From Isurus oxyrinchus (taxonomy: Eukaryota): a stretch of 64,000 nt of DNA. Position numbers and translations under genes: made by a program. Below the pieces are notes generated by a model, which was given only the letters and a program-made list of their open reading frames with translations, searched no databases and was not told the origin of the DNA. Positions 1,476 through 54,900 of this stretch are shown here, in pieces (position 1 is the first letter of the stretch; every line of letters starts with the position of its first letter). Location: assembly GCA_026770705.1 (NCBI GenBank), contig JANJGN010000009.1, positions 164,052,001 to 164,116,000 on the forward strand, written 5' to 3'.

Positions 1476-1787
1476 TTTCAGGTGCATTGTGGGCAAAAAA
1501 AGAAGTAACAGGAGTTGTGGGAAGAGCGATCACAATAGAATGTCACTATGATGCACGTTACAAGTCACATATAAAATATTGGTGTTGCGGCTGGAGTCGC
1601 CAGTGTAATATTTTAGTATTGAAAAATCAGCAAAATGGAAGAATATCGATCACAGATAACAAGGCAACAGGAATATTTATTGTTACTATGGAGGATCTTC
1701 ACTCAAGAGATACAGGATGGTACAGCTGTGGTATTGACAAACCTGGCCTCGATTCAATGTTTGCTGTCTGGCTACAAATATCTTACG
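1476..1787 (+). CDS. Gene A (inhibitory CD300/pIgR/MDIR-like receptor), V-type Ig domain exon
   Basis: Acceptor ctcag| (an alternative phase-1 acceptor gives start 1482), donor TACG|gtacat, phase 1-1, 312 nt. Translates VSGALWAKKEVTGVVGRAITIECHY...KYWCCGWSRQC...DTGWYSCGID, with the CD300/pIgR C-x-Y, KYWC-x6-C extra disulfide and D-x-G-x-Y-x-C motifs. Confidence 0.93.
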
Positions 1788-13040: not shown

Positions 13041-13370
13041 AACCCGTGTCTGTTCCTGTGCTTAGATTTTCATCACCAGCAAATGTCTCATGTTCTGGGG
13101 GTTCAGTGTCCGTCTCCTGTGAGTCTGTCCAGGGATCCCTTCCCATTCAGTACACATGGTATGAAAAGACCCTGTCTGAAGATTCAAAGATCTCTGACAC
13201 CAATAAACTGGATCTACATTGTCAATCCTTCAAACAGCAACATCATCAATATTACTGCACAGCCTCGAATAATCAGGGAGTAAAATCCAGTGACACTGTC
13301 ACTGTTAACTCAACACTCATGAATGTAACAACGAAAAGCTACAGTTATGTGATACAAATTGGAAACATTG
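13041..13370 (+). CDS. Gene A, C2-type (FCRL-like) Ig domain exon
   Basis: Polypyrimidine tract + ccaacag|, donor ATTG|gtaagt, phase 1-1, 330 nt. Translates EPVSVPVL...VSCESVQGSLPIQYTWY...QYYCTASNNQGVKSS. Confidence 0.93.
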
Positions 13371-15695: not shown

Positions 15696-15813
15696 GACCT
15701 GAGTATTTTTGTGATGTTTCTACAACAGTATCACCAACTACACATTTGACAAGTACAGATATAATTTCCACTACCAATCGATCCACACCTTCAGATCCCG
15801 AAAATGCTGAAAG
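15696..15813 (+). CDS. Gene A, Ser/Thr-rich stalk exon
   Basis: ttccacag| ... GAAAG|gtacaa, phase 1-2. Translates GPEYFCDVSTTVSPTTHLTSTDIISTTNRSTPSDPENAE. Conserved in the second copy. Confidence 0.88.
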
Positions 15814-17310: not shown

Positions 17311-17399
17311 TCTGATTTACATTGTGCTCGGAGTGCTGGGGGGCATTCTTGTGGTGTTTGCTGTTTCTCTACTTCTGTACCTGAGGCAAATCAACAAGG
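17311..17399 (+). CDS. Gene A, transmembrane exon (uncharged)
   Basis: tgtttcacag| ... AAGG|gtgagt, phase 2-1, compatible with neighbouring exons. Translates SLIYIVLGVLGGILVVFAVSLLLYLRQINK. Confidence 0.92.
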
Positions 17400-20172: not shown

Positions 20173-20484
20173 GAATTGGCAGCAGAGGAAGAGGGCACTG
20201 TGTATGCAAATGTAAACCACACTCAAAGGAGCTCGGCAGGAACACACAGAGAGGGAACTGCCGAGTTGAATAATGAGGAAATCACATATGCAGCAGTGCA
20301 ATTACAAAAGAAATCGTCTACACAGAGAGGTGAAGGGACAAGTCACTCAGTTAACAACCCGGACAGTGTCATCTACAGTGGAGTCATGATTCACAACCAG
20401 CCCACAAAGAAAAACCCTAAAACTCCATTACATGATACTCCCCAGGAATCTGAAATGGCAATTTATGCTACCGTTACTCATTAG
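20173..20484 (+). CDS. Gene A, terminal cytoplasmic exon with ITSM/ITIM motifs
   Basis: atttag| phase 0, ends at TAG. Contains TVYANV, ITYAAV, VIYSGV and AIYATV. Confidence 0.93.
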   Translation, partial: ELAAEEEGTVYANVNHTQRSSAGTHREGTAELNNEEITYAAVQLQKKSSTQRGEGTSHSVNNPDSVIYSGVMIHNQPTKKNPKTPLHDTPQESEMAIYATVTH

Positions 20485-26425: not shown

Positions 26426-26519
26426 TAAAGAGAAATAATGTCCAGTATGACTTTGACTGAAGTGGAATATTTCCTGATGTTGCAGCTGAAGCAGCTTTAG
26501 TTATTAAGATAAACTAAAA

Positions 26520-28360: not shown

Positions 28361-28374
28361 CATTCGTTTTCAAT

Positions 28375-29180: not shown

Positions 29181-29184
29181 GCCA

Positions 29185-30869: not shown

Positions 30870-31490
30870 ACAAATAGCTTTCACCACCCCAGGAGGTCCC
30901 AAAGTGCTTTACAGCCAGTGAAGTAATGGAGGAAACTTAGCAGCCAATTTGCACATAGCAAGCTCCCATCAAAAGCTATGAAATAAATGACCAGATCGTC
31001 TTCATTTTTAGATATTGGTTTCGGGAGAACTCCTTTGAAAAGTGTGGTGCGATTTCTTTTCCTCTCCACCTTAGAAGGCAGGCAGCAGGGCTTCATCTCA
31101 TCAAAAGATGGCACCTACGGACAGTGCAGCATGCCCTCAATACTGCCAGCCTGGACTGCGCACTCAAGTTACTGGATTGTGACTTGAATTCACAAACGTT
31201 TTGACTCAGAGGTGAGAGTGTTACATACTGAGCCAAGACTGAGATGCGGAGAAACTTCTTTAGCCAGAGAGTGGTGAATCTATGGAATTCATTGCCACAG
31301 AAGGCTGTGGAGGCCAGGTCATTGAGTGTATTTAAGATGGAGGTAGATAGGTTCTTGATTGGTAAGGGGATCAAAGGTTACAGGGAGAAGGGGGGAGAAT
31401 GGGGCTGAGAAACTTATCAGCCATGATTGAATGGCGGAGTAGGCTCGATGGGTCGAATGGCCTAATTTCTGCTCCTTTGTCTTATTGTCT
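30870..31490. mobile_element. Minus-strand Deu-SINE (30870-31235) abutting a + strand CR1 3' end (31238-31490)
   Basis: SINE tail/core on the minus strand; gagatgcggagaaacttctttagccagagagtggtgaatctatggaattc CR1 end. Confidence 0.7.
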
Positions 31491-32599
31491 TCCGGACCGA
31501 CATATTGACGAAATCATTCTCAATAACTTGTCCTGTACATGTCATTCCTATGACCTGTCAACGGCCTATTAAGGTCATTAAAAAACTGATTGAGGTTATT
31601 AATGAACCTGCCCGTCCATGAAACCTCGGGCGGGATGATGTTTCATGAGGGATTTAAAAATCTAAGAATATTTCAAAATAAAAGTTATGGACATGTCCCA
31701 ACTCTTGTGTTGGAGTCACATGGGGGGACATTGTAGTGAAATTTATTTCTCAGCTTTGTTTAAAGTTTAACATCTGAGCCGATCTCCCTGAGGCAGCACT
31801 TTTCCTCAGGGAGATCTGTGCACTCCTTCGCGCACTCCTGGCTGAGGGAATCCCCACCGCACCCCCCCTCACCCCGCCACACAGCGCATAGGGAGCGCAT
31901 TGCACTTCCTGGCGGACATCACGCTGGGCGGGCCTTAATTGGCCCATCCACGTAAAATGGCAGCGAGCCCCGACCAGGGGTGCCAATCAGGAACCTGCCC
32001 ACCTGTGCCCGCTCCCCCACATCCACCTGGCAGGAGGAAAATGTTGCCCCTAGGAATTTTTAGGTTGCATCAAACAGAAAGCATGTAAATATTCAACCCG
32101 ACAAAAACTTATTTTATTCATTCTTGGGTTGTGGGGGCCATTGGCAAGACCCTGTTGTCCATCCCTAACTGTCCTTGAGAAGATGGTGGTGAGTTGCCTT
32201 CTTGAGCCGCTGCTGTCCTTGTTAGGGTGTTAGGTGTTGGGGAGAGAAGTCAGATTACTGACCCAGTGAAAATGAAGGAACAGCATTATGGTTTCTGGTC
32301 AGGATACTGAGTAACTTGGAGAGGAACTTGCACATGGTGGTGTTCCCACACATCTGTTATCTTTATTCTACTAGATGGTAGAATTCAAGTGTTTGGAAGA
32401 TGCTGTCGAAGGAGCCTTGGTGAATTGCTATTACCTCAGACTACTTTTAAAGCATTTAAATTAGACAAAGGCTAGCTCCATTTACAATGTAATAAACTCA
32501 CATTCAGCTAATACTCAGGCCTATAACAAAAACCTATTTTTGGTGTTAATGATTTGGACACTCTGCAAGTTCTCACTTTATTTGTTTGAAGATACAACT

Positions 32600-33358
32600 A
32601 TCAAGTGGCACTCACTTAGCAATAACCAGGTGATTGACGCTTAGTTTGGGTTCCGCCAGGATCATTCAGCTCTGACCTCAAATATGGACAAAAGAGATGA
32701 ACTCCAGAGGTAAAGCGAGTGTGACTGCCCTTGTCATCAAGGCAGCATTTGACCAATCATGGCATCATGAAGCCCCAGCAAAACTGAAGTCATTGGGGAT
32801 CAGGAGTAAAACTCTCCAATGGTTGGAGTCATACCGAGCACAAAGGAAGATGTTTGTGGTTGTTGGAGGTCAATCATCTCAGTTCCAGAGCATCACTGCT
32901 GGAGTTTCTCAGGATAGTGTCCTAGGCCCAACCACCTTTAGCTGCTTCACAATGACCTACCTTCTGCAATAAGGTCAGATGTGGGGATGTTCGCTGATGA
33001 TTGCACATTCAGCACCATTCACGACATCTCAGGTACTGAAGCAGTCCATGTCCAAATGCAGCAAGACCTGGACAATATCCAGGCTTGGGCTAACAAGTGA
33101 AAAGTAACATTCGCACCACACAAGTGCCAGGCAATGGCCATCCCCAACAAGAGAGAATCTAACCATTGCCCCTTGACATTTAATAGCATTACCATCACTG
33201 AATCCCCCACTATCAGTCTGGGGGGGTTACTAGAAACTGAACTGGACTAGCCATATAAATACTGTGGCTGTAAGAGCAGATCAAAGACAGGGAATCCTGC
33301 AGCGAGTAACTCACCTGACTCCCCCAAAGCCTGTCCACCATCTACAAGGCACAAGTCA
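32600..33358 (+). mobile_element. CR1/L2-group LINE RT fragment
   Basis: IKAAFDQSWH...AGVSQDSVLGPTTFSCF; gttcgctgatgat (FADD). Confidence 0.8.
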
Positions 33359-33943
33359 AGGAGGCTGAGGTGGAGGTGGTGACTGAGAAGGTTGAGGTGG
33401 AGGCAGTGACTGAGGAGGTTGAGGTGGAGGCAGTGACTGAGGAGGCTGAGGTGGAAGCAGTGACTGAGGAGGTTGAGGTGGAGGCAGCGACTGAGGAGGC
33501 TGAGGTGGAGGCAGTGACTGAGGAGGCTGAGGTGGAGGCAGTGACTGAGGAGGTTGAGGTGGAGATGGTGACTGAGGAGGCTGTGGAGGAGGTGGTGACT
33601 GAGGAGGCTGAGGTGGAGGCAGTGACTGAGGAGGTTGAGGTGGAGGCAGTGGCTGAGGAGGTTCAGGTGGAGGCAGTGACTGAGGAGGTTGAGGTGGAGG
33701 CAGTGGCTGAGGAGGTTCAGGTGGAGGCAGTGACTGAGGAGGCTGAGGAGGAGGTGGTGACTGAGGAGGCTGAGGAGGAGGTGGTGACTGAGGAGGCTGA
33801 GGTGGAGGCAGTGACTGAGGAGGCTCAGGTGGAGGCAGTGACTGAGGAGGCTGAGGTGGAGGTGGTGACTGAGGAGGCTGAGGAGGAGGCAGTGACTGAG
33901 GAGGCTCAGGTGGAGGCAGTGACTGAGGAGGCTGAGTTGGAGA
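33359..33943 (+). repeat. 27-bp minisatellite (GAGGAGGYTGAGGTGGAGGCAGTGACT)n
   Basis: About 21 tandem units; open frame EEAEVEAVT. Confidence 0.95.
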
Positions 33944-34569
33944 GTAAGAGAGAATGGGAGAGGTGATGAGAGAGAGTGGGAGAGAGAGAGAGAAAGAGAG
34001 ACCAAGATGGAAAGGTGGGAGAGCGATAGAGGGCGGGAAACTGGAGACAGAGAGAGAGACAGTGGGAAAGGGGGAGAAAGAGAATGGGAACACGGTGGGC
34101 AGAGAGAGAGAGAGTGGGAAAGGGTCAGGGTGGGAAGGCCAGGCAGGGGGATCAGGTCAGGGACACAGGCCCATGCAAGCACATTCCAGGCAGGCCTGAG
34201 GGGGAGGGGATGTGTCCAGCCTGGTATGAGGATTGGGTGGTCCTGACTCCCTCCAGGGGAAGGGGCTGTAGAAGAGAATTGAAAGTGAGAGGGGGGTGAG
34301 CCGCAGACTGCTCCGTTGGTCTCAGCAGCACTTTCACCCCACTCCTCCAGTGAGGGGACTCGCACGTTTTATGGCAGAGGCAGCAACAGCCTCAGAGAAG
34401 GCGGCAACTGAGGAGGACACGGCAATGGCTGAAGTGGAGGCACAGAAATGGAGGTGGAGGCTGCGGGTCGGGCAATATGGCAGAGGAGGAGTTGGCAAGG
34501 GCAGCGGAAGCAGAGGTGGTGATGGAGTTGGCAACAGCAGTGGAGTTGGCTGAGGAAGAGGCAAGAGTG

Positions 34570-35105
34570 GAGGAGGCTGAGGTGGAGGAAGTAGCTGAGG
34601 AGGCTGAGGTGGAGGCAGTGACTGAGGAGGCTGAGGTGGAGGCAGTGGCTGAGGAGTTTGAGGTGGAGGCAATGGCTGAGGAGGCTGAGTTGGAGTCAGT
34701 GACTGAGGAGGTTGAGGTGGAGGTGGTGACTGAGGAGGTTGAGCTGGAGTCATTGGCTGAGGAGGCTGAGGTGGAGGTGGTGACTGAGGAGGTTGAGGTG
34801 GAGGCGGTGACTGAGGAGGTTGAGGTGGAGTCAGTGGCTGAGGAGGCTGAGGTGGAGGTGGTGACTGAGGAGGTTGAGGTGGCGTCAGTGACTGAGGAGG
34901 TTGAGGTGGAGGCAGTGACTGAGGAGGTTGAGGTGGAGGCAGTGACTGAGGAGGTTGAGGTGGAGGCAGTGACTGAGGAGGTTGAGGTGGAGGCAGTGAC
35001 TGAGGAGGTTGAGGAGGAGGCAGTGACTGAGGAGGCTGAGGTGGAGGCAGTGACTGAGGAGGCTGAGGTGGAGGCAGTGACTGAGGAGGCTGAGGTGGAG
35101 GTGGT
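34570..35105 (+). repeat. 27-bp minisatellite inside the 305-aa acidic ORF 34477-35394
   Basis: About 20 units of the same repeat. Confidence 0.95.
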
Positions 35106-35959
35106 TGCCGAGGCGATGGAGGTAGTGAATGTCGGGGTGGAGGAGGAGACATCAGCAGCGACAGCAGCAGAGACAGTGACTGAGGCTGAGGAGGGGGAGG
35201 CAGCGGCTGTGACAGTGACAGAGGGAGAAGCAGCGAAGGCGGCAGCAGCAAAGGCTGAGGCCACAGTGAGGGAGGCTGTGGAGAGGGAGGTGGAGGTGGG
35301 GCAGAGGCAGCGAGGAGACGGTACGAGACCAGGAGCAGCAACAAAACCTGCCTTGTGGTTTGTGAGGCTCAGGGCAATGGCGACTATGAGTTGATATCTT
35401 CCATGTGCCATGTGTGTGTCTCCGAGTCAGCGCACCGGACCACACTGCTTCTGCCCGATTAGGGCGCTTCAGTGGAGTCCGACACCAGTCCAGTGCCACC
35501 CAGCTCCCATTCCCGAGGACAGGTGATGGAACCTGCCCAGTGCCAGGATGAGCTGCTTGGTAAGATCGGGAGGTGGGAAGTAGAGAAGGCAGCCGACCAG
35601 GAAAAGCTGGAGGATATCTCCAGGATTACTGACTGTCTCCAAGAAGAAACTCTTGTAGCCTTCAGGCAGGGTATATATATGTTTATATAGCTGCAATTTA
35701 AAGTTACCTGCCACATCCCTTTTAACACTTTCTAATGCAGCATCGCTCTGATCAGAATCAGATTTATTGGGGTTGTGCAAATGTCTCCCCAGCCTCTGAT
35801 ATAACATTAAAAAGCTGCTTTTTCCTTTCCAGTTGCAGTAAGAGGACTGTCCCAGCCTCTCAATGTGACAGGGCAGCCCAGGACTATGTCTCTCAGGAGC
35901 CTCAGCCTTTACAATTGTTCTACAGGTCTGAACTTTTCTCAGCTTGTTTGGACAAGAAC

Positions 35960-40262: not shown

Positions 40263-40302
40263 ATGATGTGGATTTTGATTCTCCTCATTAGTTCTCTGCC
40301 CG
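40263..40302 (+). CDS. Gene B, signal peptide (leader) exon
   Basis: ATG ATG TGG ATT TTG ATT CTC CTC ATT AGT TCT CTG CCC G|gtgagt. MMWILILLISSLP joins in phase 1 to VSG-ALW of the V exon, giving a classic signal peptide. Confidence 0.9.
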
Positions 40303-40409: not shown

Positions 40410-40700
40410 GAGAGGTCTTGGGCACAGTGGGTAGTGTCTCTGTACCTGAGCCAGAAGCTCTGTGTTTGAGTCCCACTTCTGTTCTTGTTGAGAATGGAAG
40501 GCGCGTTCTAACCAGGACCAACAGATTGATTATCAACCTGAAAATCTACCAACAGACCGAAGGCTGGTGGTAAGAGGGTTTGAGATCCGAGTCCAACATG
40601 ATTGATGTGGAGTGGTGCCGCTCATTCTGTTGTCTCCGGAGGTTAGTGACCTGTTCCAGGGAAAACAAGCTTTGGAAAGCAAAAGTAAACATGTGCTTTG
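40410..40700 (+). mobile_element. tRNA-derived SINE in gene B intron 1
   Basis: ggcacagtgggtag A box; gtttgagtccc B box. Confidence 0.5.
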
Positions 40701-42161
40701 ACTGCCGCATCCGTCTCTAGATGTGGGAAGTCTCCTAAGTCTAAAGGCACAAAATAGTCAGCAAAACCAAATGAGTAATAATTGTGAAGTATTTTATTAC
40801 CCTGTGAATTAACTATCACAACATGGGAATAGTTAACAAATAAACTGAACTGCATTATTAATTATGAATGATAAATAAAGGAGAATTAAATTTTCAGAAA
40901 GCTATGCAAGCAACATTTTGAAAATGAAAACCTTTTTTAATTGGTAATTTTCAATATAATCTGATGTCCAGTATAGACTGAAGACTGCAGCGGTAATAAT
41001 CCCACAAATAAAACATGTCCCAAGTTGGCGAATATTTCTGTTTTTGAAAGTACAGTTGATGAAATATTGTGTTATGAGGCTCTCTCAGTGACACTGTTCC
41101 TCACTGGTAGATGGTTGGTCTACATCACTCTTCTCATAAGTAGCCTTTTCTTGTTCATTCTTTAACTTTAAAAAACTAGATTTTGCTCATCACTCAGTAT
41201 TGCCACCTCTCCATCATTTCGATGAATCTATTTTATAACACACAATGTTAAACTCCCAGCCCCATCTGCTCTTAACCACCTCCCCAAAATAGTTTGTGCC
41301 TCTAGCTGATCAATTTTATGCAGAATACTTGATGTACTTATGGACAGGAAACTGAATCATGTTTCTGTCTGTTTGGCAATCTTCTTCTTTTCAATCCTTC
41401 CTCTTTCTGATCTGATCTCTTTCCCATTCCCTTTACATCTGTAACTTTCCCTGTATCTTTTTCCTTTCCTTCATTTCTCTCTAGCCATTTAATTATTTTC
41501 AATCTCTCTTTTGTTATTTTAGTGCAAACTCTTTCCCCACAGCATGAGTTTCTCTCCCAGCAAGGCCATTGGTCTCATGAACGTTCAAGTCAAGGCATCC
41601 AAATCCCTACCTCAGGAATCCATCCATACTGTAAGGCCACCTATCACACAACCTCGCAAACTTTCAAGACCTTCAAATCCTACCTTTGGACATCCCTAAC
41701 TCATTCAAGATCTGAACAACCCCTCCTGCAAGGACACAACCCTACCCCGCACCCCACCCACCTCAGATCAGAGCAGGGAACTGTCGGCTCCTGTGACCAC
41801 CTCCACACTGCTCCCCAGCCGACTGCAAATCAGGCCTGTCAATCAGACTGGTTTCTGGCTGTGGAACCTCCTGATGATGTCATACGCAGTCTAGGGTGAA
41901 ACCCCAAAATATGAGGCAGAACCCCAATTTCCAGGTTCCCTCACTCTACTAGCCCCTGCCAATATGTCAAGAAAATGTCCCAATTATCTCACGAGTATAT
42001 CATTGTCTGAGACGTGCTTTGGAACCACAGTGAGGCTCTGATAAGTGTCTATATGAATGATTACTCTCATCACAAACTGGATGGAATTTAACTCATTAAA
42101 ATGCATCTGTTTGAATTAAGCAGTTATTTCCAGTTCAGTTTCTCAAATGTTGTCTCCTCAG

Positions 42162-42476
42162 TTTCAGGTGCATTGTGGGCAAAAGAGAGAGTAACAGGAG
42201 TTGTGGGAAGAGCGATCACAATAGAATGTCACTATGATGCACAGTGGTACAAGTCACATATAAAATATTGGTGTCGCGGCTGGACTCGCCAGTGTAATGT
42301 TGTAGCATCGACAAATTGGCGAAATGGAAGAATATCGGTCACAGATAACAAGTCACAAGGATTATTTATTGTTACTATGGAGGATCTTCACTCAGGAGAT
42401 ACAGGATGGTACAGCTGTGCTATTGAAGTAACTGGCCACGATCCAATGTTTAATGTAAAGCTACAAATATCTTACG
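42162..42476 (+). CDS. Gene B (activating-type CD300/pIgR/MDIR-like receptor), V-type Ig domain exon
   Basis: Same splice sites as gene A, 315 nt. Translates ...IECHYDAQWYKSHIKYWCRGWTRQC...GDTGWYSCAIE. Confidence 0.93.
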
Positions 42477-43336
42477 GTACATTTCTTACTGATTTTCTTT
42501 ATTACTCTCGACTGAAATGTCTGCTCAATGTTTTATCTGGGAGGAAACATGACAGCTCCGATATCCCGAGGCTCCACAGCAATGCAGAGTCTTAAAGGTA
42601 AAGGGCAGTGGTCGGGAAATCCGACTCATGTTACCCAAACCCAATTCATGGCCTGTCAAACATGTCAGAATTGAACTTTACAAGTGAACTAAACGGAAAT
42701 TGAGAAGTTGTTTTGATGGTAAAAGAAGCCTCTTTATTAATTGTTGAGACATTGGGCTGGATATTCAGCCTCAAAGCGGGTAGGGGCAATTCGGAAAATT
42801 CCCCGCTCGGCCTTGGAAGAAAGTGCCCACAAAGGTGGGATTCCCATTGCTGGGAGCTGTGCCCGGGCTGCAGTCTGGCCAGCCACACCAGGAAGAAATG
42901 CAGAGGCAGCCACAGGGGCTGCCGGCTGCGGAGACGGGCTGTTTAAAAGGCCCCTCCTTAATGCCCTTGGACTTTGTAACAGCTAAACTCAAAACACAAA
43001 GGCCCTTCACCCCTCACCCCTCACAGCCCCCAAAGGGGGTGGATGTGAGGGGAAAATTTGTCATGAGGGGGCTTGGAGGTGGGTGGAAGTGTACAGCTTG
43101 AAGTCAGGAGCATGAGGGGGTATAAGGCGTGGGTATAGGGATAGAGGGGGAACGAAGGGCCAAGCGGGTTGGATGGGGGTGTGACTTGACATAGCGGGCA
43201 TGAGATGCACCTTTTGAACTTAGCTGTTAAAAGATCCCCTCATGCAGACCAGTGTTTACAGCTCCTCTGAGGGGCTTTGGACTACGACTCAATCAAAACC
43301 TGGCCCGAGTCCATGAAAATTGCAGAGGAGTCGGAC

Positions 43337-45455
43337 GTCACTTTGGTCTGAAGGCTGCACAAAGCACAGGGTAGAGGCCCTGGACTAAGACACCTGCCTT
43401 TATCTTGTACAGAAAGTGTTCACATGTGAGTGACATGAACATTGCTCATCAAAACAAGGAGCGATAGGCAGGGAGACATTCTTTGGAGTTTATTGACAAT
43501 AATGAACAGTATGTACAAGTGATTAACACCCGTGCCCAGGACGTGAAACTACTTCTCCTCAACCACGCGGTGTCTGGCAGCACTGTTGAGACCTTCTGTG
43601 CTCGGTGGGTGACCACGGGGGTTGGGGTCCTTTATCCAGCCTCTTAATCACATTTTGGTTTGATGTTGTAAGTGTCCTTTAAATCATGTCTTTGGTTTTG
43701 CAGTGACCCTAACTTAGGGGCTGCGTTTTATATTATCCCTCATTTTGTTAATTTAGTTTATTGGGTTGGCTTTAAAAGAGCTACATCTTCTCAACTTTCC
43801 TAATCCTCCCGCTACATCTTGGTGCTCCGCAGACATCCACAGTGGAGGTAAAGACAGTCTGCTGACTGCTATGCTCTGTCTGTGATAACTTTGGCGGGCA
43901 TCCTCTGGAGGCCTGAGGCCTGTAGGGCCCCGGCTTCCTTTCGAGGTCCTACTGTGTGGCATTAGCACCCTCCTTTTCCTGTGGACTGGGAGCTGTCCAG
44001 GTCACAGTAAGAGGGGAGTTACCAGGATGAATGGCCCCGGAGGGTACACATGTTGATCCTTCTCGCTATGGGTACCCAATGGCCATTGGCTGAATCCTTG
44101 AGGAGCAGGTGTAGCTGGAGTGAGATCGAGCTGCCTGCACCCCTCTCGCATACACACTGTCAGGGGCCAACTATACATCAGCAATGGAGTTCAGCCCTGC
44201 AGCAGTGTAGGAACGATGCCCTGGACCAACGTCTCCATGGCAGCTGCCATCCTACCAGTGTTGACCTCGGTGCAGTGACATGCCGGCGCTATCACCTCAG
44301 AGTGCAGGCGGACGGACTCCTCCATTGTGCCTTGCAATCTGAGGGGTGCAGCAGATATCCCTTCCTGATGTTCCCGCGTTGGCCTTTCCAGCTCCAGCAA
44401 CTGTGACATGACCAAATCCAGAAACGCGTCACCTGACTCGAACTCAGCAAATTTATGGCCTCCAGCTGCCCACTGAGTGCCGGACACCTGGGAAGCCCCT
44501 GCCGCTGCCAGCTGTGGATCAGGCAGTGCAATTTGCTCACCAGCTGTGACCCTGAGTCTACTCTAAAGCTAGATCTCACCGAGGGGTGTACCTCTGCACT
44601 GGTGGAGGGTGTGGGTGAGGGGAGTGACGGTACATCAAGGAGGGTCCCTCCAGGTTCCTCTTCAGAGATTTCTTTGGGGATTACTTGGTGTCCCTGGTTC
44701 TCCATCGGCTGTTTCCCAGATGTGCGTGTGGAAGCAAGTGGAAATATTTTGTGCATGGCAGTGGCCTGTGAAACAGGACACATCACTCACAGCATGGTTG
44801 TCTGATGGATGTTGCACTGCTGGACCCTCACTTGGCTGAGCACCGCAGACCTCACCGTCAGAACAGGATTGGTCCAGGCCGTTGCCGGCCAGCTGGATGG
44901 CTCTGTTTACAAAGTACTAGTACTGTTCGGGAACATGATGTTCATATTTTCATACATGTCGCTGAATTTGTCAGTCACATTTATGCCTCTATTATCAACC
45001 AAAGAGCGGGATTGTCCCCGATTTGCACTAAGTGCGTTAGTGGGCGGGGGAATCGATGTTTTACACACCGGCCACAATGGGGGGTTTTCAGGCCGCATCG
45101 TCCCAAACCCAACGCATTAGTTATGCATTCCCGGGAAACATACCATTTCCATGGTGAGTGGGATCTCATTCACCCCAAACACCATCATTTCACTGCTTCA
45201 TCAGGCCCAGCACCATATGTAAAGTCCAGCCTCGTGCACACATCTCAGTGTTTCCAACCCAGGACCACTGCAGGGAAGATATCCCCAAGAGGCAAAAAGA
45301 CTGTAGCTCCCAGGTTTAGTGAGCTGTCACTGCAACACATTGTGTACACTGTGGGGGCCCTGCTGTGATGTCCTCTACTCCCACTCTGGCTGCAGTATGG
45401 ACAGCGCTGTGACCAACCAGGCCTGGGAGGCGGGGGCAGCAGTGGTATACCCACT
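43337..45455 (-). mobile_element. Harbinger-like transposon fragment with a single Tx1-like insertion at 43564-43780
   Basis: Homologous to 57435-58790. Myb/SANT-like start RGKKTVAPRFSELSL on + at ~45290. The Tx1 piece is flanked by CTACTTCTCCTCAAC / CTACATCTTCTCAAC. Confidence 0.72.
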
Positions 45456-47444
45456 GAATGTTATTAAGTTAACCCTCACTGTCAGATAATGTAAACAGTA
45501 TGAAAAGTGTGGATGAGAAACCCTTAGAAACTTCCTTGCTGGATGGAAACAAATGCTGGAGAGAATGGAAATTTCTAAATGAAATGAGTGGATGCCTGAT
45601 TGTTTTAGAGAATGAAATGCAGGTACAACAAATTTTTTAGGGATCTGAGGAGAGGGCTATCTTGCAATATGATGAAGTATAGAATATTGAGATTCTTAAT
45701 TCAATTTGTTTCACACTTTTTGGTCACCATATTAACTGAAAATTTTATTTAAATGAGAGAAGGTCATCATCTAATCGTTTATTAATTGTGTTTAATTGTA
45801 TGCAGTGGTGGCATTAATTGGTGATTCACTTGTGCACCTATAAACAGATGCAGACTGAAACTGCGGGTGGTGGATTTGATTAGATTCACACAGTAAACAG
45901 CACTTTAAAACAGTTCCACAAGTCTTAACCTATCTAACCTCAGAGCTAATCTTTCTCTTTTCCGTTCAGCAACTAACACTGTAGATTTAAAAAGCTATAG
46001 AAGTGCAATAATTTTACCACACAGTGCTTTCACATTGGGGTGTCCACTGACAGAAACTGGGTCTTCAGGTCTGGGCCTTGTACACACTGTCTCCTGGGAA
46101 TTCTGACCTGCTACCCTGCTGTCTTCAGGGAGATCTGGCCAACCATCCTGCTGTGTTCTGGGAGATCTAAGCAGCTACCCCCTCACATAGGCTTCAGTAT
46201 TCCCTTAAATGTGTTTCTTCTCTTTCATCTCTCTTTGTAGTACCCAGTCTGTTCAGAAATGCTTTTATCCCAGGATTGATTAAATCAATCTTTACTTTAA
46301 TTCTTAGACTTGTAAAAACAAACGTACCCTATCTTTATGTCACTTCATGACACCTTTTTACAACCTGCATATATCCCCCTTTGAACTAAAACAACTTAAT
46401 TCAAACTATTCCTGTTATTGCTTCATGTACAAATCTGTTGAAGTTCTTTTTTGTTCATTAACATATCAAAACCACTTCTTACTGTTGACTTTTGACCCTA
46501 TCCACTGATGAGGCAGTCCACGTCATGGAACCATAACCTTAAATCTGGAGATAGGCTCGTCAGGGATGTCAGGAAGCACTTCTTCACGCAAAGTATAGTG
46601 GAAATCAGGAACACTCTCCTCAAAAAAGCTCTTTAGTTCAATTGAAAATTTCAAAACTGATTGACAGATTTTATCTGGTAGCAATATTCGGGTTATGGGA
46701 CCCAGGTAGGTAAATGGACAGAAGATACTGGTCAGTTGGGATTTAATTGAATTGTGGAACAGGCTGAAGGGGCTGCATGTCCGAATCCCTTTTCCATGTT
46801 CTGGAGCCCCAGTTAATTTTTCAGTGGTCTGGGCCTTGTGAGTAACAATGTGCTGTGAAACAAGCTCACAAACAGTTAGCATTTCAAAGAGACACTTTCC
46901 AATCACCAGGCAAACTGTGACCTGTGTTGTTTCAGAGTACAGTTTGTGACAGTGAAAGCAGTGAAGGCCTGCCAAACCTCACTAAAAATGTTGGTGAAAG
47001 TGTCACTTTTCTCTGGCTAATCCCTTGACCAAAGAGGGAATTTTAATTCCCCTCCCCCATCCTGCATCGGGTTGAAGCATGATGGGATTTGCTGGATCCA
47101 GAACCTTCTCCAGCACAGCTTGTGATCCAGGAGACACACGAAAGCTTCACCCCCACCCCCAGGCAAATGTTTTATACAATTTCTCCCTCCCCATGATTGG
47201 CCAATCCTGCCCCAAGCAGCAAAGTCACCCTGACTCCCTCCTCGCTGCTGTGCTCCGAGGACAAATTCCCACCAATTTCTCCCATGTCCAGTTCCCAAAC
47301 CCAAATTTAACATCCACCCCATAGAGTGGTAGATGTGTTGGTGAGATTCCAACATGGCAGAGCCTGGCTGAGATGAAGTGCAAAGTTTGAAGACTATTTG
47401 ATTATTAAATGTTCAGTATCTGAATGTTTCTTTCTTTCCAACAG

Positions 47445-47774
47445 AACCCGTGTCTGTTCCTGTGCTTAGATTTTCATCACCGCTAAATGTCTCATGTTCT
47501 GGGGGTTCAGTGTCCGTCTCCTGTGAGTCTGTCCAGGGATCCCTTCCCATTCAGTACACATGGTATGAGAAGACCCTGCCTGAAGATTCAAAGATCTCTG
47601 ACACCAATAAACTGGATCTACATTGTCAATCCTTCAAACAGCAACATCATCAATATTACTGCACAGCCTCAAATAATCAGGGAGAAAAATCCAGTGACAC
47701 TGTCACTGTTAACTTAACACTCATGAATGTAACAACGAAAAGCTGCAGTTATGTGATACAAATTGGAAACATTG
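47445..47774 (+). CDS. Gene B, C2-type (FCRL-like) Ig domain exon
   Basis: ccaacag| ... ATTG|gtaagt, 330 nt, 5 amino-acid differences from gene A. Confidence 0.93.
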
Positions 47775-50098
47775 GTAAGTGTTACTTTCTACAAACAATG
47801 TGGCGAATGAATGTCTTAAATTCATGTCTATCGAAACTGGTCACTGTTTCAGTTCCTTCAGTCAATCTGAGAAATTGCAACTGGCCAAATTCACTCTCTC
47901 TGGTTCCTCAAACATTCTGAACAAGGTCACTAAGTTGCATTTTTCATGAAAAATGGACAGGATCAGAAAATATCCCCAAAACATGCAAAAATATTGCAGA
48001 ATCTCCAACAAACCCATCGAATCAAAATAGCATTTGATTGACAGAGCTTTCATAAAGCAATTTGTCTATTTCCAGCAGATGGAATTGTGAAATGCAACCT
48101 CCAACTGTTGTGTCCTAGTTTGGGAAGGATATCACTGATAGAATAGAGAAGAATTGAATTAAAATGAACCCTTGGATGAGAGGTTTTAGTCATGAGGAAA
48201 GTATCATCACAACTGAGGTGAATGACCAGCTGGAGGACGTGGAAATTGTTAGAAATTTGGATAAGGTAACTCTAACTATTTCCACTAGTCAGTGAGTCAG
48301 CAACAAGAGAGCATTAACTTTAAAATTATCACTAAAAGGACAAAGGGAGAAATTTGGAGAATTTTATTGATGCAAACTGTTTTTAGGACATGGAATGCCC
48401 AACTGAAATAAGTTTACAAACAAATTTAATAATAGATTTTAAAAGGGAAACAAATGTATGAGGGTGTGGGAAAAGGACAATGAAATGGAATTAAATGAGG
48501 AGATCATTCAGAGAACCAGCATTGGAGCGATGGGCTGAATTCCCTCCCCTGTGTTGTAAAAATTCCATCATTCCGGTCAATATCTCAAATTATCCTGTAT
48601 AAAAAATTTGTTCCCTCCCCATAAAACAATGACCCTGGTTCTGACATAAGGAGGGCTTTAGCCTATTTGAATGTAGCGGTTCAATTTTCTGCAGAGTGGG
48701 TGCAGCATGTTCACCGAGAAACACCAACATGGGCACAAAACAAAGAGAATCACATTTTCACCTGAGCAGCAGGAGACAGGAATTTACATATGCAAATATA
48801 TTGACTCTGGTCATGTGGTCTCTTGCCTCAGTTGTCAGGGAAGAAGGGTGGAATTTTACACCCCCATTGCGCCAGGGACTGGGCTGTAAAATGCAGCCAG
48901 CCATTCTAAACTCCATGCACTCCAGCAGGACCATAAAATCCCACTGTCACAAGGCTCTGAGCAAAGGCTGTCAGCAGCAGGTAGAAATTACCCCTGTAAA
49001 CTGTGTTTGTACTGGAGTTGTCAGCAGGGACTCAGTTCCACTCTGACCTTTGATGCCAGTCTTTTGTAGTTACAAGTTCCCCTTAAGAATTAAAATTCAG
49101 GCTGATACCACTGTCCAGCACTGAGGTAGTGCTATACTGGTGGTGGTGCTGCTGTGTAGATGAGGTGTTAAACTGAGGATCCACATCCCCCTTAGGTAGA
49201 TGTAAACATTTCCAGGGTATTATTCACAGAATAGGGAAGTTCTCCTGGTGTCCTTGAAGCCTTTATTCCTCAACCAATACACACAAATTGGGAGCAGGAG
49301 CAGGCCACTTGGTCTTTTGAGCCTGTTAATGTCACTACAAAACAGATCATCTAGTGAATGTTTTACTGATGTTTGTGGGGCTTTATTGTGTAGGAATGAA
49401 CTTCCACGTTTCCCAACATTAAAACTTTGGCTTTACTTCAAAAAAGTACTTCATAGGCTCTGAAGCACTTTGGAATATCCCAAGGTTGTGAAAGGTGATG
49501 AATCAGCACAACTTGTTTCTTACTTTTTGAAACAAACCATTTATTAAAATACATCTGAACCAATTATCTGAGTGCAAACTGCAGGGGGGGGAGGGGGAGG
49601 GAGGAGCCAGTCCCAGCAGCAAGGTGGTCATTATAATTAAATGGTCCGAAAATCACTGGCAGGTTTGAGACATTCATGGTCAGTGGGTGAAGATTCTCAT
49701 CTTTACTGCAAGCTCAGAAAACTGCCCCCAAAGTGCAGAAAGTGACCATTGCCAGTATTAGGATGTGACTGTTTAATGTGTTCACATGAAATTCATGTCA
49801 AGAATGTGTATCTCTGGATTGCAGTCCACCAACTTGAGCCCTTACCAGGCCCACTTCTAACTCTGTCCCACCAACTCTCAGATATAGGAAAGAATGTGGA
49901 ATTACCAGTAAAGATAGATCACCATCAGGTATCAGCAACCTCTCCACTTGTGACCAGAGAGGGGTAAATTACACAGAAATCAATTCTACCTGCCAGGCTT
50001 TTCCTCAATTAATGAGGTTCCATTTGACAATGATGCTCTCTCAGTTGACTACAAGTGAAAATGAGGTGAATCTGAATGTTATTCCCTTGTGTCAACAG

Positions 50099-50216
50099 GA
50101 CCTGAGTATTGTTGTGAAGCTTGTACAAGAGTATCACCAACTACATATTTGACAAGTACAGATATAATTTCCACTACCAATCGAGCCACAACTTCAGATC
50201 CCGAAAATGCTGAAAG
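50099..50216 (+). CDS. Gene B, stalk exon (Cys-enriched)
   Basis: gtcaacag| ... GAAAG|gtacaa. Translates GPEYCCEACTRVSPTTYLTSTDIISTTNRATTSDPENAE. Confidence 0.88.
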
Positions 50217-51560
50217 GTACAATGTTCTCATGGATTGGCATTGCTTCCATATGTGAGAGATACAATTGGCCAAAGGAGTGAAAGTTGTTCATTAATTGTA
50301 AAGTAGCTCATCAGAATGGAAATGGTGGCTGGGTTTATATCATGCTGTTGTGTTAGCTTCTTAATGAGGCTGCATTTTTCTGTTGGAAAATACAAGCAAG
50401 GAGTGAGCTTTTCCATTGTGTTGCCGCTCAGATGGTGTTTTTTGCCTTATTCACCTTGATTACTTCACCGCTAAGGTAACCTCACAGTGTGTGAGGAGTT
50501 GTACTTGTCAAACTTACCTTGCTGCTGTCTACACTGACAGAGTGGTTGTATTTGGGCTGATGAAAAGGAAGAATTAGCGTGATATATCTGCACATCCCTT
50601 GGTTTCACTAATGAGAGACATCTTGCAACTCTGGTCCCGTTTCCATATGATTAGCCTGAGCTGTCGACAATAAGTAGCAGAAATTGTAGTCCGATGTAAA
50701 CACTCAGGAACCGGGTCTTTGAAGTTACAATGGTGATAAAGAGAAAACGCCAACTAAATGTCAAACAGAAAGAGGGACAGTTGGAAATGGGCAGCAGGTA
50801 TGTCCGCAGCTGTGGAGAAAATAAACACGTTCATGGTTTGGGTGCAGACACTTCTTCAGAATTCTAGTCCACACACGAAGCGAAGCAGGTCCACTCACCC
50901 CACAGATCCCAACTGAGCTGCTGAATGTTTCCAGAATCTTCTGTTTTCCATTCATATTTCTAGCACATGCAGTGCACTTACTTTTATCCAGATTATTGTC
51001 AATGATTTAAAAAGTATTGAAAGTCTAGGGTCTGAATTTTCCGCTCGGCGGGGGTGGGGGTGGGGTAGAGCGGGAGCGAGCACGGGCAGCTGTGGACCCC
51101 ATCGCCATCCACCATCGGGTTTTTGACGCCATTTTGCGCGGGCGGCCAATTTAGGCCATCCCAGCGTATTTCCCGGCTCCCGAGGATAGCGGCAGTGGGC
51201 GAGAAGCGGGGGGTGTGCACAGACAACCGGGTCCAATGGTGACCCAGCGGCCTGTTTAAATGAAGGCCTGGCAGCCTGTTCCAGCTGCTCACAATGGCCA
51301 GTGCAAAGAATTTTCACTTACAATTCCGCTTAGCCTTACAGTTAGACATTATGGACATGCTAAAGAAATTTGCTTCGTTTGATTTTTATCTAATGATCAT
51401 GAAGTTGATAAGTAGAACTTTAGTTGATTCTTTCAGCTAAAGTCCCTTGTCTACTTTATGTTGCTGCAAAAAATTACAGTGTAAAGCGGAGAGTCATGTT
51501 TCAAAAATGAAACAGTCTCATTTCATTTAAATGGTTTGATATTTCTTCTCTTTTGCTCAG

Positions 51561-51651
51561 TTACATTATCTGGGATGTGATACGCTGGGTGCTCTTTACT
51601 CTCCTGGTGATTTGTGCTGTTTCGGGCACATGGTGTACGAGAAAATCTAAG
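51561..51651 (+). CDS. Gene B, transmembrane exon with charged residues (Arg, Asp); the downstream terminal exon is unresolved
   Basis: tcttttgctcag| phase 2, matching the stalk donor; donor AAG|gtgaga. Translates SYIIWDVIRWVLFTLLVICAVSGTWCTRKSK. Confidence 0.87.
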
Positions 51652-51696
51652 GTGAGAGTTATGGACTGTATAAGAATCATTATGGGCAGTTTGCAA

Positions 51697-52621
51697 TGTT
51701 ATGATGTGGCAGATGATGTGTGTCAGGCAGACCAAATCCACGAGTGAAACTTGGTCGAGCTGTCACAACGGTTTTGCAATTTATATTTATTATGAGATGC
51801 ATGCACTGAATTCAGACACCATAAGTCTACCAAACTTTTAGAGATTTAAAAAATATATCGTTAAATATATTTATTAGCAAAAGATAGATTTCAATTACAT
51901 ACATAAGTCTACTAATTTCTTCTATAATAACTCGTAAAATTCCTAATTAGCCTCACTCCCAGTTACACCTCCTTTAAGGCAACTGTACAAAGAATAGATA
52001 TTAGGTTTCAAGCAGATCCAGCAAATTGACACAATGATCTAGACAGTGGAATTCCAAATGGCTTTCACCAGCTTCAGTTTCGTTAGACAGCAGGCTTATG
52101 CACAAATGCTGGAGGCTTCATTAAGGCTACTTCAAACACATCTGTTAGGTCTCATATGGACTTCTCCTGACACATAGCCTCATTCTCCTTTATATATGTT
52201 TCCCTCTATTTAACATGTAAACCCTATTGTTTCAGATACCTTTGAAACTGTGTCTTCCTCACAATGTAAAAACTTTCATGTCGATACTATATATTGTCAG
52301 TAACCTTTGAGATAAAGAAACACATTCCTTCATCTTGCTTAGCTGCCTAATTGTAAAGAGACTAAAATACTTTTGAAATCCAAATCTCCCTTCATTTATC
52401 TAAAAAGGCAAATTCCCTTTACACTTTACTTGCTAAACCAGTATCCATGTTTACTCATTAGCATGTCAAATACCTAGCTTCTTTTGTTGAGTTATATCAT
52501 GCCATCTACCTGATTCCAAATGTAATTAAATCTCACACAGACAGACCCAAACACTTACCCCCATAAACCGACTCCACAATAAAGCAGAAAATATTATGAA
52601 AATTATTATACTTTCATGACA
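51697..52621. mobile_element. Probable solo LTR
   Basis: TGTTATGA...TCATGACA ends, flanks gcaa/gtaa. A related diverged copy at ~55806-59703 is split by the Harbinger element. Confidence 0.55.
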
Positions 52622-52731
52622 GTAAATTCTCCATCAATTATTTCAAAAACATTGATCACAGATATTGTCAAGAAAAACTTGCATTGATGTTAAGGTCCAC
52701 AGATTGAAACAAGGTGTTTTACAGATTCTAT

Positions 52732-53650
52732 GGGCAGAATCATCTGAGATTTGCACAAAATGCCGTAGTGAGTGGGAAAAAGGACATCCCGGGTGTGAAA
52801 AAACAGCACAGACCAAGACCCTGATTTCCCAGTTTTTACTGGTGTTCCATGTTAAAGTATATGAGCCCCACTCAGGCCCGTATTCTTATTTCCCATTTTT
52901 TACTGTTTGTCCCTTCTGGGATATTATCCGCCGGCTGCAATGGCAGATTTTCACACCTTATTATCCTATTCCTGGCACATCCCACCTCATTAATTATGCG
53001 TTCACTGGAAACACACCGGGTCGCTGGTGGGAAGGCCTCTGACGCGCCACCCCACCGTCACCTCAGGCCTTCATTTATCCAGACGCCCTATTTAAAGGCC
53101 GTTCCTGCAGAGAGATAGCTCTCTCTAAGGCATCAGAAACTGCTAGGAATTCATAGCTGCCAAAGGGAGGAAACATGTTGCATCCAAAATTGAGCACTGC
53201 CTCCCTCAGCCTACTGGGCACTGTGAGAGCTGCCGTGAAGTCCTCTACCCCAATTCTAGGCGAAGACCAACAAGCACAGCAACAAATCTAGCATGGGTGG
53301 TGGTGGCAGCAGTGGTCAGTGCCAATGCACTGCTAAAGAGGACAGCCACCCAGCGCTGAAAGAGGATGAATGGTCACCTTCTTTTTGCTAGGTTAAATCA
53401 CTTTTCTCATCACTCACAACTCAAAAACCCATCACACATTCACTGGGATCTCACTCAATACCAGTTCAAGGGACATCACCATTCTCCCTCTCACACACAC
53501 CTTCCTCTGCCCTGCCGATCCTGTCTTCATCCATGGCACCACTTACCACCCACACGTGCCGGGTGCCCTCCTCATGTGGCCTGGCAGGCACCCTGCTTAC
53601 GCTCTCTCCATCTGTTTTCCTGCAGAACAAGCTGGATGATGTCAGGGATC
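52732..53650 (+). mobile_element. Harbinger-like left-end fragment with decayed Myb/SANT exon
   Basis: GGGCAGAAT terminus; AWVVVAAVVSANALLKRTATQR*KRMN remnant at ~53291-53371. Confidence 0.65.
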
Positions 53651-53744
53651 TGACACTTACTGAGAATATAGGAGTCACGGACACTCCCTTGGAATCGCAC
53701 GCAGACCCGTGGAAGCTCTTGCTGTTTGTTTAAATATTTCTTGC

Positions 53745-54900
53745 CATTCCATCTCATAATCATCTTTCTCCCTCTTTATTCATTTTTTGGTCATCCGCTG
53801 CTGGTTCCTAAAAAGTTCCTAATCCTCAAGCATACCATTAGTTTTCCCCCCTTTTTATACTTTAGTTGTTGATTGGATACTCTCCTTGACTGCCGTCGTT
53901 AACCATGGGTGGTTCATCCTTCTCATCAAGTCCTTCCTTTTGAGCGGGATAAATTTTTTCTGAGCGTTATGAAATATTTACTTAAATGTCTGCCACTGCT
54001 CACCCACTGACCTTCCTGTTAGTCTATTCTCCCAGCCAACTCTTCCTTCATAACTCTGTAATTGGCCTTATTTAGGTTGAGGACACTGGTTTTAGAGACG
54101 AGCTGCTCACCCTCAAACAGAATTTCAAATTCTACAATGTTGTGTGATCGCTATCCCCTAGAGGATCCCTAACTACACGATCTCTTATGAATCCTACCTC
54201 ATTACGCATTGCTAGATGCAAAATAGCCTGTTCCCAAGTAGGTTATGCAACATATTGCTGAAAGAAACTATCCTTGGTACACTCTACAAATTTGTCTTCC
54301 AAGTTAGCCCTGCCTATCTGATTTCTCCAGTCAATATGCAGATTAAAATAATCCATGACAATTGTAGAACCCTTCTTACATGCCTACATTATTTCCCAAT
54401 TTATGCTTTGTCCTACAGTGAGCAAACTCTTTGGAGGCCCATAGATGAGTCCAACGCATGGCTCGTTCCCCTTACTAATTGTTATTTCTACCCAAACTGA
54501 TTCCACATCACGATCTATGCCAGCTATGTCACCACCGCACTGATACCTTCATTTATTAACAAAGCTACCCCACCTCCTTTTCCTTTTTGCCATTTTTTCC
54601 GGATTGTCGAATACCCTTGAATATTGAATTCCCAGTCTTGGTCACCCTGCAACCATGTCTCTGTCATGGCTATCAAGTCATATCCATATATTTCTATTTG
54701 TGCCGTCAACTCATCTGCCTGCATTCAGATAACATGCCTTAAGCTTGGATTGTTTACCATTATTGCTCATTCTGGTTCTCATTTCTGCTGCACTCTTCTG
54801 CTCCTTGTCCTGCCCCTTCTCATCATACTTTGATTACCATTCGCCTCTTCACTACCCTGTACTTCTGCTCTCTCATTTCCTTTAGATGTTTTAAACTTCC
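53745..54900 (-). mobile_element. CR1 LINE endonuclease-region fragment
   Basis: YDLIAMTETWLQGDQDWEFNIQGY...KGGGVALLI. Confidence 0.82.

What the first reader, a model, noticed from the sequence alone, without database searches (positions are those of the whole stretch)
42162..42476. Extreme nonsynonymous excess confined to the V domain
My manual codon alignment of the two V exons gives ~25 amino-acid-changing codons plus one inserted codon, and only one purely synonymous codon (GTC/GTA). The flanking intron is almost identical between copies, and the C2 exon has just 5 replacements and 3 silent changes. Changes cluster in NILVLKNQQ vs NVVASTNWR and GIDKPGLDSMFAVW vs AIEVTGHDPMFNVK (C'-C'' and F-G regions). 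An exon more diverged than its introns implies diversifying selection on the ligand-binding face, as expected in a pathogen arms race.
Basis: partly seen in the sequence, partly recalled or inferred. Interest (0 to 1): 0.85.

Follow-up and report, generated by a model that had tools for sequence, protein, structure and literature searches.

The report
Shark receptor pair, divergent V exon
Two neighbouring shark immune-receptor genes, one inhibitory and one activating, are nearly identical except that their ligand-binding exon differs almost only by amino-acid changes, a pattern already familiar from paired immune receptors and probably caused by patchy copying between gene copies plus selection for diversity.

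Summary
Between V exon B (42162-42476) and V exon A (1476-1787) there are 25 replacement codons, one silent codon and one codon indel. The C2 exon has 5 replacements and 3 silent changes, and the nearest intron is about 98% identical. Omega is 3.6-4.7 (p about 0.01), falling to p = 0.034 once double-nucleotide changes are modelled.

"Confined to V" and "exon more diverged than its introns" do not hold. The stalk exon has 8 replacements and no silent change. Noncoding patches 170 nt upstream and 560 nt downstream are as diverged as the exon.

The changes are clustered and often multi-nucleotide. They fall on the CDR1, C'-C'' and F-G loops of a CD300lf-like fold. A third family member, a Carcharodon protein, matches copy B in the N-terminal half and copy A in the C-terminal half.

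The genes are an inhibitory/activating pair of the known MDIR (CD300/pIgR-like) family, and a spliced transcript carries the B exon.

Best reading: patchy gene conversion within a large cluster, plus selection keeping loop differences. A point-mutation arms race is not shown.

The scan noted the same pattern on neighbouring DNA (s1-866035).

The parts
40263..40302 (+). Leader exon of gene B (signal peptide, ends in phase 1)
   Evidence: Found by a scan for ATG followed by a hydrophobic run and a GT donor. Window 40272-40301 equals the 30-nt loose end that the transcript contig carries before 42161.
42162..42476 (+). V exon of gene B, the stretch of the finding. A V-set domain of CD300/pIgR type, 104 full codons at 42164-42475.
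   Evidence: Pfam V-set E = 1e-9. PDB sequence matches to pIgR and CD300. AlphaFold model pLDDT 95.6 with best fold match mouse CD300lf, TM 0.93. A 1117-nt contig of run X15 covers 42161-42476 with 3 differences and continues into the leader and C2 exons.
1476..1787 (+). V exon of gene A, the paralogous copy. It is one codon shorter and has the same splice sites.
   Evidence: tblastn 75% amino-acid identity. Nucleotide alignment. A DNA contig of run X1 at single-copy depth carries the 3-nt deletion and 11 differences.
47445..47774 (+). C2 exon of gene B. Its partner in gene A is 13041-13370.
   Evidence: Alignment. 5 replacement and 3 silent codons, omega 0.6-0.9, not significant. Window 47445-47474 equals the transcript contig's loose end behind 42476.
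13041..13370 (+). C2 exon of gene A
50099..50216 (+). Stalk exon of gene B. Its partner in gene A is 15696-15813. There are 8 replacement and 0 silent codons, and B gains two cysteines.
   Evidence: Alignment. Counts, Fisher p = 0.096. tblastn with P0004.
15696..15813 (+). Stalk exon of gene A
51561..51651 (+). Transmembrane exon of gene B, with Asp and Arg inside the membrane span and a short tail (activating type). It lies beyond the end of A/B homology at 51024.
   Evidence: Translation. tblastn hits to short-tailed family members at 51544-51669. Homology ends at 51024.
17311..17399 (+). Transmembrane exon of gene A (uncharged span)
20173..20484 (+). Last cytoplasmic exon of gene A, with ITIM/ITSM-like tyrosine motifs (inhibitory type). 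At least one small exon between 17399 and 20173 was not located.
   Evidence: tblastn to long-tailed family members. Translation and stop codon. The reading phases of the two exons do not join directly.
41841..41990 (.). Noncoding island of high A/B divergence 170 nt upstream of the V exon (about 21 differences in 150 nt, indels included)
43036..43185 (.). Noncoding island of high A/B divergence downstream of the V exon (22 substitutions in 150 nt, mostly A or T in copy A against G in copy B)

Best explanation
The window holds two tandem genes of the elasmobranch MDIR family. Each has a CD300/pIgR-type V domain, a C2 domain and a stalk. Gene A ends in an uncharged membrane span and an ITIM-bearing tail, so it is inhibitory. 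Gene B ends in a membrane span carrying Asp and Arg and a short tail, so it is activating.

The two share a segmental duplication (1-16622 against 40691-51024) that is 3.9% diverged on average. The divergence is a patchwork of stretches at 0-2% and islands at 10-15%.

The V exon is one such island. Within it the framework codons are 99% identical, while six short clusters on the CDR1, C'-C'', D-E and F-G parts carry nearly all the change.

Most likely mechanism (inferred): repeated short-tract gene conversion or recombination among the many members of this cluster both homogenises frameworks and introns and moves loop segments between copies. Selection on the ligand-binding face keeps or favours amino-acid differences between the inhibitory and the activating partner.

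Shown: the gene structures, the counts, the clustering, the patchiness, the mosaic relation to a third member, and splicing of the B exon. Inferred: conversion as the source of the differences, and selection as the filter.
For: - Duplication map and sliding identity.
- Noncoding divergence is overdispersed (index 1.85, p = 6e-10), and noncoding islands match the exon's own maximum.
- Inside the clusters pN is 0.38 and pS 0.117. Outside them pN is 0.012 and pS 0.
- Multi-nucleotide codons: 8 observed against 3.4 expected. Adjacent differences: 9 against 3.6. Both p = 0.004. The double-nucleotide rate is significant, p = 0.005.
- P0004, a Carcharodon protein, matches copy B at 13 of 14 informative sites in codons 9-65 and copy A at 7 of 8 in codons 67-99. 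Max chi-square 14.2, permutation p = 0.001.
- At the sites that differ, 58 of 88 homologues are closer to A in the N-terminal half although the nearest relative matches B. Many differences are therefore states already common in the family.
- Variable sites coincide with the family's hypervariable columns (p = 4e-6) and with loops (p = 2e-4).
- Omega stays above 1 in all treatments, p = 0.003-0.06.
- Contigs show at least three further V paralogs whose C'-C'' part cannot be aligned.
- Opposite signalling ends.
- Precedents: conversion in introns but not in Ig exons of CEACAM32 (PMC7042247), and conversion between CD300A and CD300C (PMC12447643).
Against: - No donor sequence for either copy's loops was found.
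- AU tests do not reject an (A,B) clade in either half of the V domain (p = 0.37 and 0.27). Region-specific acceleration on each copy, without any exchange, remains possible.
- The clusters were defined from the differences themselves.
- One noncoding island has a strongly biased change spectrum, so it may reflect a local mutational process and not history.
- Whole-exon dS is no higher than background.
Confidence: 0.5

Rival explanations
1. After a recent duplication, new point mutations in the V exon were fixed one by one by diversifying selection on the ligand-binding face, as in an arms race with a pathogen or a fast-changing ligand. No exchange with other copies was involved.
For: - Omega 3.6-6.2, p = 0.003-0.034.
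- dS of the V exon equals the background.
- The changes fall on loops of a CD300lf-like fold, and CD300lf is itself a virus receptor by the titles of its solved structures.
- Five states in copy A (codons 38, 49, 50, 52, 65) occur in none of 88 homologues, so they look newly arisen.
- AU tests do not reject an (A,B) clade.
- The pair is inhibitory/activating, the setting in which such races are proposed.
Against: - Noncoding islands are as diverged as the exon.
- There is an excess of multi-nucleotide and adjacent changes. Such changes are known to produce false signals of positive selection (10.1101/165969).
- Codons 97-99 hold five differences within 8 nt, including the exon's only silent codon.
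- The relation to P0004 is a mosaic with a single breakpoint.
- Many 'new' states are the family's commonest residues.
Confidence: 0.25
2. There is no positive selection. The loops are weakly constrained, and the replacement excess is a by-product of multi-nucleotide events or imported tracts that are almost always nonsynonymous. The case was also picked out after looking at many duplicates.
For: - The p-value weakens from 0.01 to 0.034-0.06 when non-independence is allowed for.
- There are only 2.5 synonymous events, so the ratio rests on very few counts.
- pN in the exon (0.129) is about the same as divergence in the noncoding islands (0.10-0.15).
- The same pattern was noted on other pairs of this cluster, so selective reporting is a concern.
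Against: - Omega exceeds 1 in every treatment.
- The framework codons of the same exon are strongly conserved, with 2 differences in 210 nt. The exon is spliced into mRNA. Both copies are therefore functional, and the contrast between loops and framework is real.
- The stalk exon shows the same direction, 8 replacements to 0 silent.
Confidence: 0.2
3. Assembly artefact: one of the two V exons is a chimera or a collapsed or misjoined paralog in a repetitive cluster.
For: - The cluster is large and repetitive.
- Copy B's F-G segment was not seen in the DNA contigs of X1, X2 or X5.
- In another individual the A-type contig carries one extra CTC codon.
Against: - The independent transcript contig of run X15 carries the whole B exon with 3 differences, joined to the leader and C2 exons.
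- DNA contigs at single-copy depth match B exactly over 42213-42361 and match A with its deletion.
- The tool itself warns that a hole in contigs proves nothing.
Confidence: 0.03

Closest known systems
Modular domain immune-type receptors (MDIR) of cartilaginous fish, first described in clearnose skate
   Same: - N-terminal V domain of CD300/pIgR/TREM type followed by further Ig domains.
- A multigene family with activating and inhibitory members, as summarised in PMC3031540.
- Skate MDIR2 (P0056) is a direct sequence relative, about 61-62% identical over the V exon.
   Different: These are shark genes, probably lamniform, since the best match is a Carcharodon protein at 85% over V. This particular A/B pair and its divergence pattern are not described in any paper I could find.
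Mammalian CD300 family, in particular the CD300A/CD300C paired receptors and CD300lf
   Same: - Same V fold (TM 0.93, 36% identity to mouse CD300lf).
- Inhibitory and activating partners with related ectodomains.
- Gene conversion between the partners is reported in primates (PMC12447643).
   Different: CD300 proteins have a single V domain and no C2 domain, whereas a C2 exon follows here. In primates conversion keeps the partners' V domains alike, whereas here the V exon is the diverged part. Lipid or virus binding is untested.
CEACAM1 paralogs, for example bovine CEACAM32
   Same: A recent duplicate with a swapped transmembrane exon. Conversion tracts lie in introns and the leader but spare the Ig-domain exons, which the authors read as selection against homogenising the ligand-binding domain (PMC7042247).
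   Different: A different Ig family and a different tissue context. Here there are also signs of exchange inside the V exon.
KIR, LILR, Siglec and NITR-type rapidly evolving paired Ig receptors
   Same: Clustered multigene families, ITIM against charged-transmembrane partners, and hypervariable ligand-binding loops. These points rest on my own knowledge and were not tested here.
   Different: Unrelated V or C2 lineages. The comparison is about how the system works, not about membership.

Membership tests
MDIR (elasmobranch modular domain immune-type receptors) | N-terminal V-set domain of the CD300/pIgR/TREM type | tested here: met
   Pfam V-set. Best PDB sequence matches are pIgR and CD300. 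Best fold match is CD300lf, TM 0.93.
MDIR (elasmobranch modular domain immune-type receptors) | Sequence kinship with the skate MDIR proteins | tested here: met
   P0056, named Modular domain immune-type receptor 2 of Rostroraja eglanteria, matches P0004 at E = 4e-82. It matches the window's V exons at 61-62% and the C2 exons at 56-58%.
MDIR (elasmobranch modular domain immune-type receptors) | Second cysteine pair in the V domain (C to C' strands) besides the canonical B-F pair | tested here: met
   C22 and C44 are invariant, and C37 and C85 are at least 90% conserved in 30 family members; both window copies carry all four cysteines. Copy A has an extra Cys at 38. The disulfide itself was not verified.
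MDIR (elasmobranch modular domain immune-type receptors) | Family holds both ITIM-tailed and charged-transmembrane members in gene clusters | tested here: met
   Gene A has an uncharged span and ITIM/ITSM-like motifs. Gene B has Asp and Arg in the span. The cluster context comes from scan notes only.
Mammalian CD300 | Single V domain directly followed by stalk and transmembrane region | tested here: not met
   A C2 exon follows the V exon and is spliced to it in the transcript contig.
Mammalian CD300 | Binding of phosphatidylserine, phosphatidylethanolamine or other lipids through the CDR loops | not testable with these tools
   This needs binding assays.
pIgR | Several tandem V-like domains and transport of polymeric Ig | tested here: not met
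   Each gene has only one V exon. The function is not testable here.
Positively selected paired receptors (a concept, not a sequence family) | Related ectodomains on opposite signalling modules | tested here: met
   C2 is 95% identical and V 75% identical at the amino-acid level. Homology ends in the stalk-transmembrane intron at 51024, and the tails are unrelated.
Positively selected paired receptors (a concept, not a sequence family) | Omega above 1 in the ligand-binding domain, robust to recombination and multi-nucleotide change | tested here: inconclusive
   p = 0.003-0.011 under standard models and 0.034 with a double-nucleotide rate. Recombination could be neither excluded nor proven.

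The most novel reading that the evidence does not exclude
In this roughly 1-Mb shark MDIR cluster, V-exon loop segments may behave as exchangeable cassettes. Germline short-tract conversion would repeatedly reshuffle CDR-like segments among dozens of inhibitory and activating genes while frameworks and introns are homogenised. That would give an innate receptor family a combinatorial repertoire built over evolutionary time. The A/B pair would be one snapshot of this process, with the activating copy diverging from an inhibitory copy that a pathogen exploits.
Probability: 0.12. Interest if true: 0.55.

Novelty: new member of a known kind. Interest (0 to 1): 0.3.

Why it matters
The finding gives a clean, transcript-supported example of an inhibitory/activating MDIR pair in a shark, with the divergence concentrated on the predicted ligand-binding loops. 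It is useful raw material for studying how innate Ig receptor families diversify in the oldest jawed vertebrates.

It also shows that a pairwise dN/dS above 1 in such clusters cannot be read as an arms race until conversion and multi-nucleotide events have been dealt with.

It does not reveal a new kind of system. The same pattern was already noted by this scan on a neighbouring pair.

Tried and rejected
- **Whole-exon replacement by an old third paralog.** Rejected. dS of V (0.039) equals dS of C2 (0.041) and noncoding divergence (0.039).
- **The search of protein representatives with the V exon.** It returned no relative closer than 68%, so it gave no donor.
- **AU tests of an (A,B) clade on the two halves of V.** Not rejected, hence inconclusive.
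- **Looking for copy B's F-G segment in DNA contigs of three runs.** It was not seen, but contigs are patchy and the transcript contig has it, so no conclusion was drawn.
- **The divergent stretch at 42980-43180, taken at first for an exon.** Rejected, because all three frames contain stops.
- **Leader exon search by a strict motif.** It found nothing. A looser scan found the exon.
- **Joined protein model.** Exons were searched one by one by reference.
- **Species names.** The runs' organisms are coded, so species names are inference only.

Full report
**What is there.** The window is vertebrate DNA from a cartilaginous fish. Every protein relative of the exon comes from sharks, rays or chimaeras, and the best is a Carcharodon carcharias protein (P0004), 85% identical over the V domain.

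A self-comparison shows a segmental duplication, copy A at 1-16622 and copy B at 40691-51024. The blocks are 92-99% identical and are interrupted by insertions in A.

Gene B:
- Leader exon 40263-40302.
- V exon 42162-42476.
- C2 exon 47445-47774.
- Stalk exon 50099-50216.
- Transmembrane exon 51561-51651, beyond the end of homology, with Asp and Arg inside the membrane span and a short tail.

Gene A:
- V exon 1476-1787.
- C2 exon 13041-13370.
- Stalk exon 15696-15813.
- Transmembrane exon 17311-17399, with an uncharged span.
- Last exon 20173-20484, with ITIM/ITSM-like tyrosine motifs.
- At least one small exon in between that I did not locate.
- Its leader lies before the window starts.

These models rest. 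A and B are therefore an inhibitory/activating pair.

**Family.** The V exon is a V-set domain. Its best sequence matches among solved structures are pIgR and CD300. An AlphaFold model (pLDDT 95.6) is closest to mouse CD300lf (TM 0.93). Skate MDIR2 (P0056) is a direct relative, so these are MDIR-family genes. PMC3031540 describes that family as CD300/TREM/pIgR-like activating and inhibitory multigene receptors of skate.

**Checking the observation.**
- The V exon has 25 replacement codons, one silent codon (98) and one codon indel (27/28).
- The C2 exon has 5 replacement and 3 silent codons.
- The nearest flanks are 98% identical, with 3 differences in 169 nt upstream and 10 in 500 nt downstream.
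- Noncoding divergence over the whole duplication is 307 of 7898 positions, or 3.9%.

**Is it more than chance?**
- Nei-Gojobori gives dN 0.142, dS 0.039, omega 3.6, one-sided p = 0.012.
- My pairwise maximum-likelihood codon model gives omega 4.7-5.8, p = 0.003-0.011 for V. For C2 it gives omega 0.9, not significant.
- V against C2 in replacement-to-silent ratio gives p = 0.054.

**What weakens the simple reading.**
1. The excess is not confined to V. The stalk exon has 8 replacements and no silent change, and B gains two cysteines there.
2. The exon is not uniquely diverged.
   - Noncoding differences are overdispersed (index 1.85, p = 6e-10).
   - The noncoding window 43036-43185 has 22 substitutions in 150 nt, the same as the V exon's own maximum.
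   - Another island lies at about 41841-41990, separated from the exon by 170 nearly identical bases.
   - Protein-level selection cannot make noncoding islands.
3. The differences are not independent.
   - Eight codons carry two changes, against 3.4 expected.
   - Nine pairs of differences are adjacent, against 3.6 expected. Both have p = 0.004.
   - A double-nucleotide rate improves the codon model (p = 0.005). With it, omega is 6.2 but p rises to 0.034.
   - Using only single-change codons the ratio is 17 to 1, p = 0.03-0.06.
   - Multi-nucleotide events are known to mimic positive selection (10.1101/165969).
4. The exon is itself a mosaic.
   - Seventy framework codons hold 2 differences in 210 nt.
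   - Thirty-four codons in six clusters hold the rest, including all synonymous change (pS 0.117 inside, 0 outside).
   - The clusters were defined from the data, so this is descriptive only.
5. P0004 matches copy B at 13 of 14 informative sites in codons 9-65 and copy A at 7 of 8 in codons 67-99.
   - Max chi-square is 14.2, permutation p = 0.001.
   - In codons 1-66, B and P0004 differ at 5 of 66 positions while A differs from both at 16-17.
   - In codons 67-104, A and P0004 differ at 5 of 39 positions while B differs from both at 10-11.
6. Many of the differing states are the commonest residues of the family, and 58 of 88 homologues are closer to A than to B in the N-terminal half.
   - Five states in A are found in no homologue and look newly arisen.
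7. AU tests on the two halves do not reject an (A,B) clade (p = 0.37 and 0.27).
   - The mosaic could therefore also come from each copy changing a different region.

**Reads.** I laid contigs of four public runs on 41900-42800.
- A 1117-nt contig of run X15, labelled as probable RNA, covers 42161-42476 with three differences. It runs on into sequence identical to the leader exon (window 40272-40301) and to the start of the C2 exon (47445-47474). It is a spliced transcript, and the exon borders are as predicted.
- Two of its three differences are replacements at positions where A and B also differ (42353 and 42362, codons 64 and 67).
- DNA contigs of the probable source species hold both the A-type and B-type N-terminal halves at single-copy depth.
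- The same contigs include an A-type form with one extra CTC codon in the F-G loop.
- At least three further V paralogs are under 90% alike, and their C'-C'' part is too different to align.
- B's F-G segment was not seen in the DNA contigs. Given the tool's own warning, that proves nothing.

**Structure.** The variable sites are enriched in the CDR1, C'-C'' and F-G regions (15 of 29 against 11 of 75, p = 2e-4). They also coincide with the columns that vary most across 88 family members (p = 4e-6).

**Interpretation.** The data fit a multigene cluster in which short-tract conversion or recombination homogenises most of the duplicated unit and moves loop segments between copies. Selection then keeps amino-acid differences on the ligand-binding face of an inhibitory/activating pair.
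- This agrees with precedents in CEACAM (PMC7042247) and CD300A/C (PMC12447643).
- It also agrees with this scan's note on a neighbouring pair (s1-866035). That note is not independent evidence.
- A pure point-mutation arms race is possible but not shown.
- A purely neutral explanation is less likely, because omega exceeds 1 in every treatment and the frameworks are conserved.

**Limits.** The organisms of the runs are coded, so the species is only inferred to be a shark close to the lamnids.

**Verdict.** This is a known kind of system and of modest interest.

Noticed in passing
window 50099-50216 vs 15696-15813: The stalk exon has 8 replacement and 0 silent codons between the copies. B gains two cysteines close to an existing one, which resembles the cysteine-rich stalk that scan notes report for activating members of this cluster.
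   Followed up: partly
window 43030-43200 vs 2340-2510: A noncoding G-rich patch has 24 substitutions, of which 15 are A or T in copy A against G in copy B. This strongly one-sided spectrum suggests a local mutational or conversion bias and not ordinary drift.
   Followed up: partly
window 16622-34700 vs 51024-61150, and 34705-35896 vs 61152-62343: A/B homology stops in the stalk-transmembrane intron and resumes about 10-18 kb later at 95.5% identity. The signalling ends of the two genes therefore sit in a non-homologous middle segment of a larger duplicated unit, a swap of tail cassettes.
   Followed up: partly
window 33347-35209 and 61088-61698: There are long arrays of a repeat with a period of about 54 nt (self-hits shifted by multiples of 54), present downstream of both genes.
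   Followed up: no
window 1587-1589 (codon 38 of V exon A): Copy A has Cys where the family has His, Arg or Gln, directly after the conserved Cys of the YWC motif. None of 88 homologues has it. It may add a free or mispairing cysteine.
   Followed up: no
window 42353, 42362 and 42438: Other individuals show replacement variants in the B exon (T/A at 42353 and 42362). The B contig of run X1 breaks exactly at 42362, as it would at a heterozygous site. An A-type contig has an extra CTC codon in the F-G loop, a form shared with the Carcharodon protein P0004.
   Followed up: partly
window 57434-58796 vs 43338-44908 and 8290-10414: A third, older copy (76-84% identical) of the intron segment that follows the V exon. 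It is probably a transposon or the remnant of an earlier duplication.
   Followed up: no
window 62767-63273: A run of 507 N (assembly gap or masked stretch).
   Followed up: no
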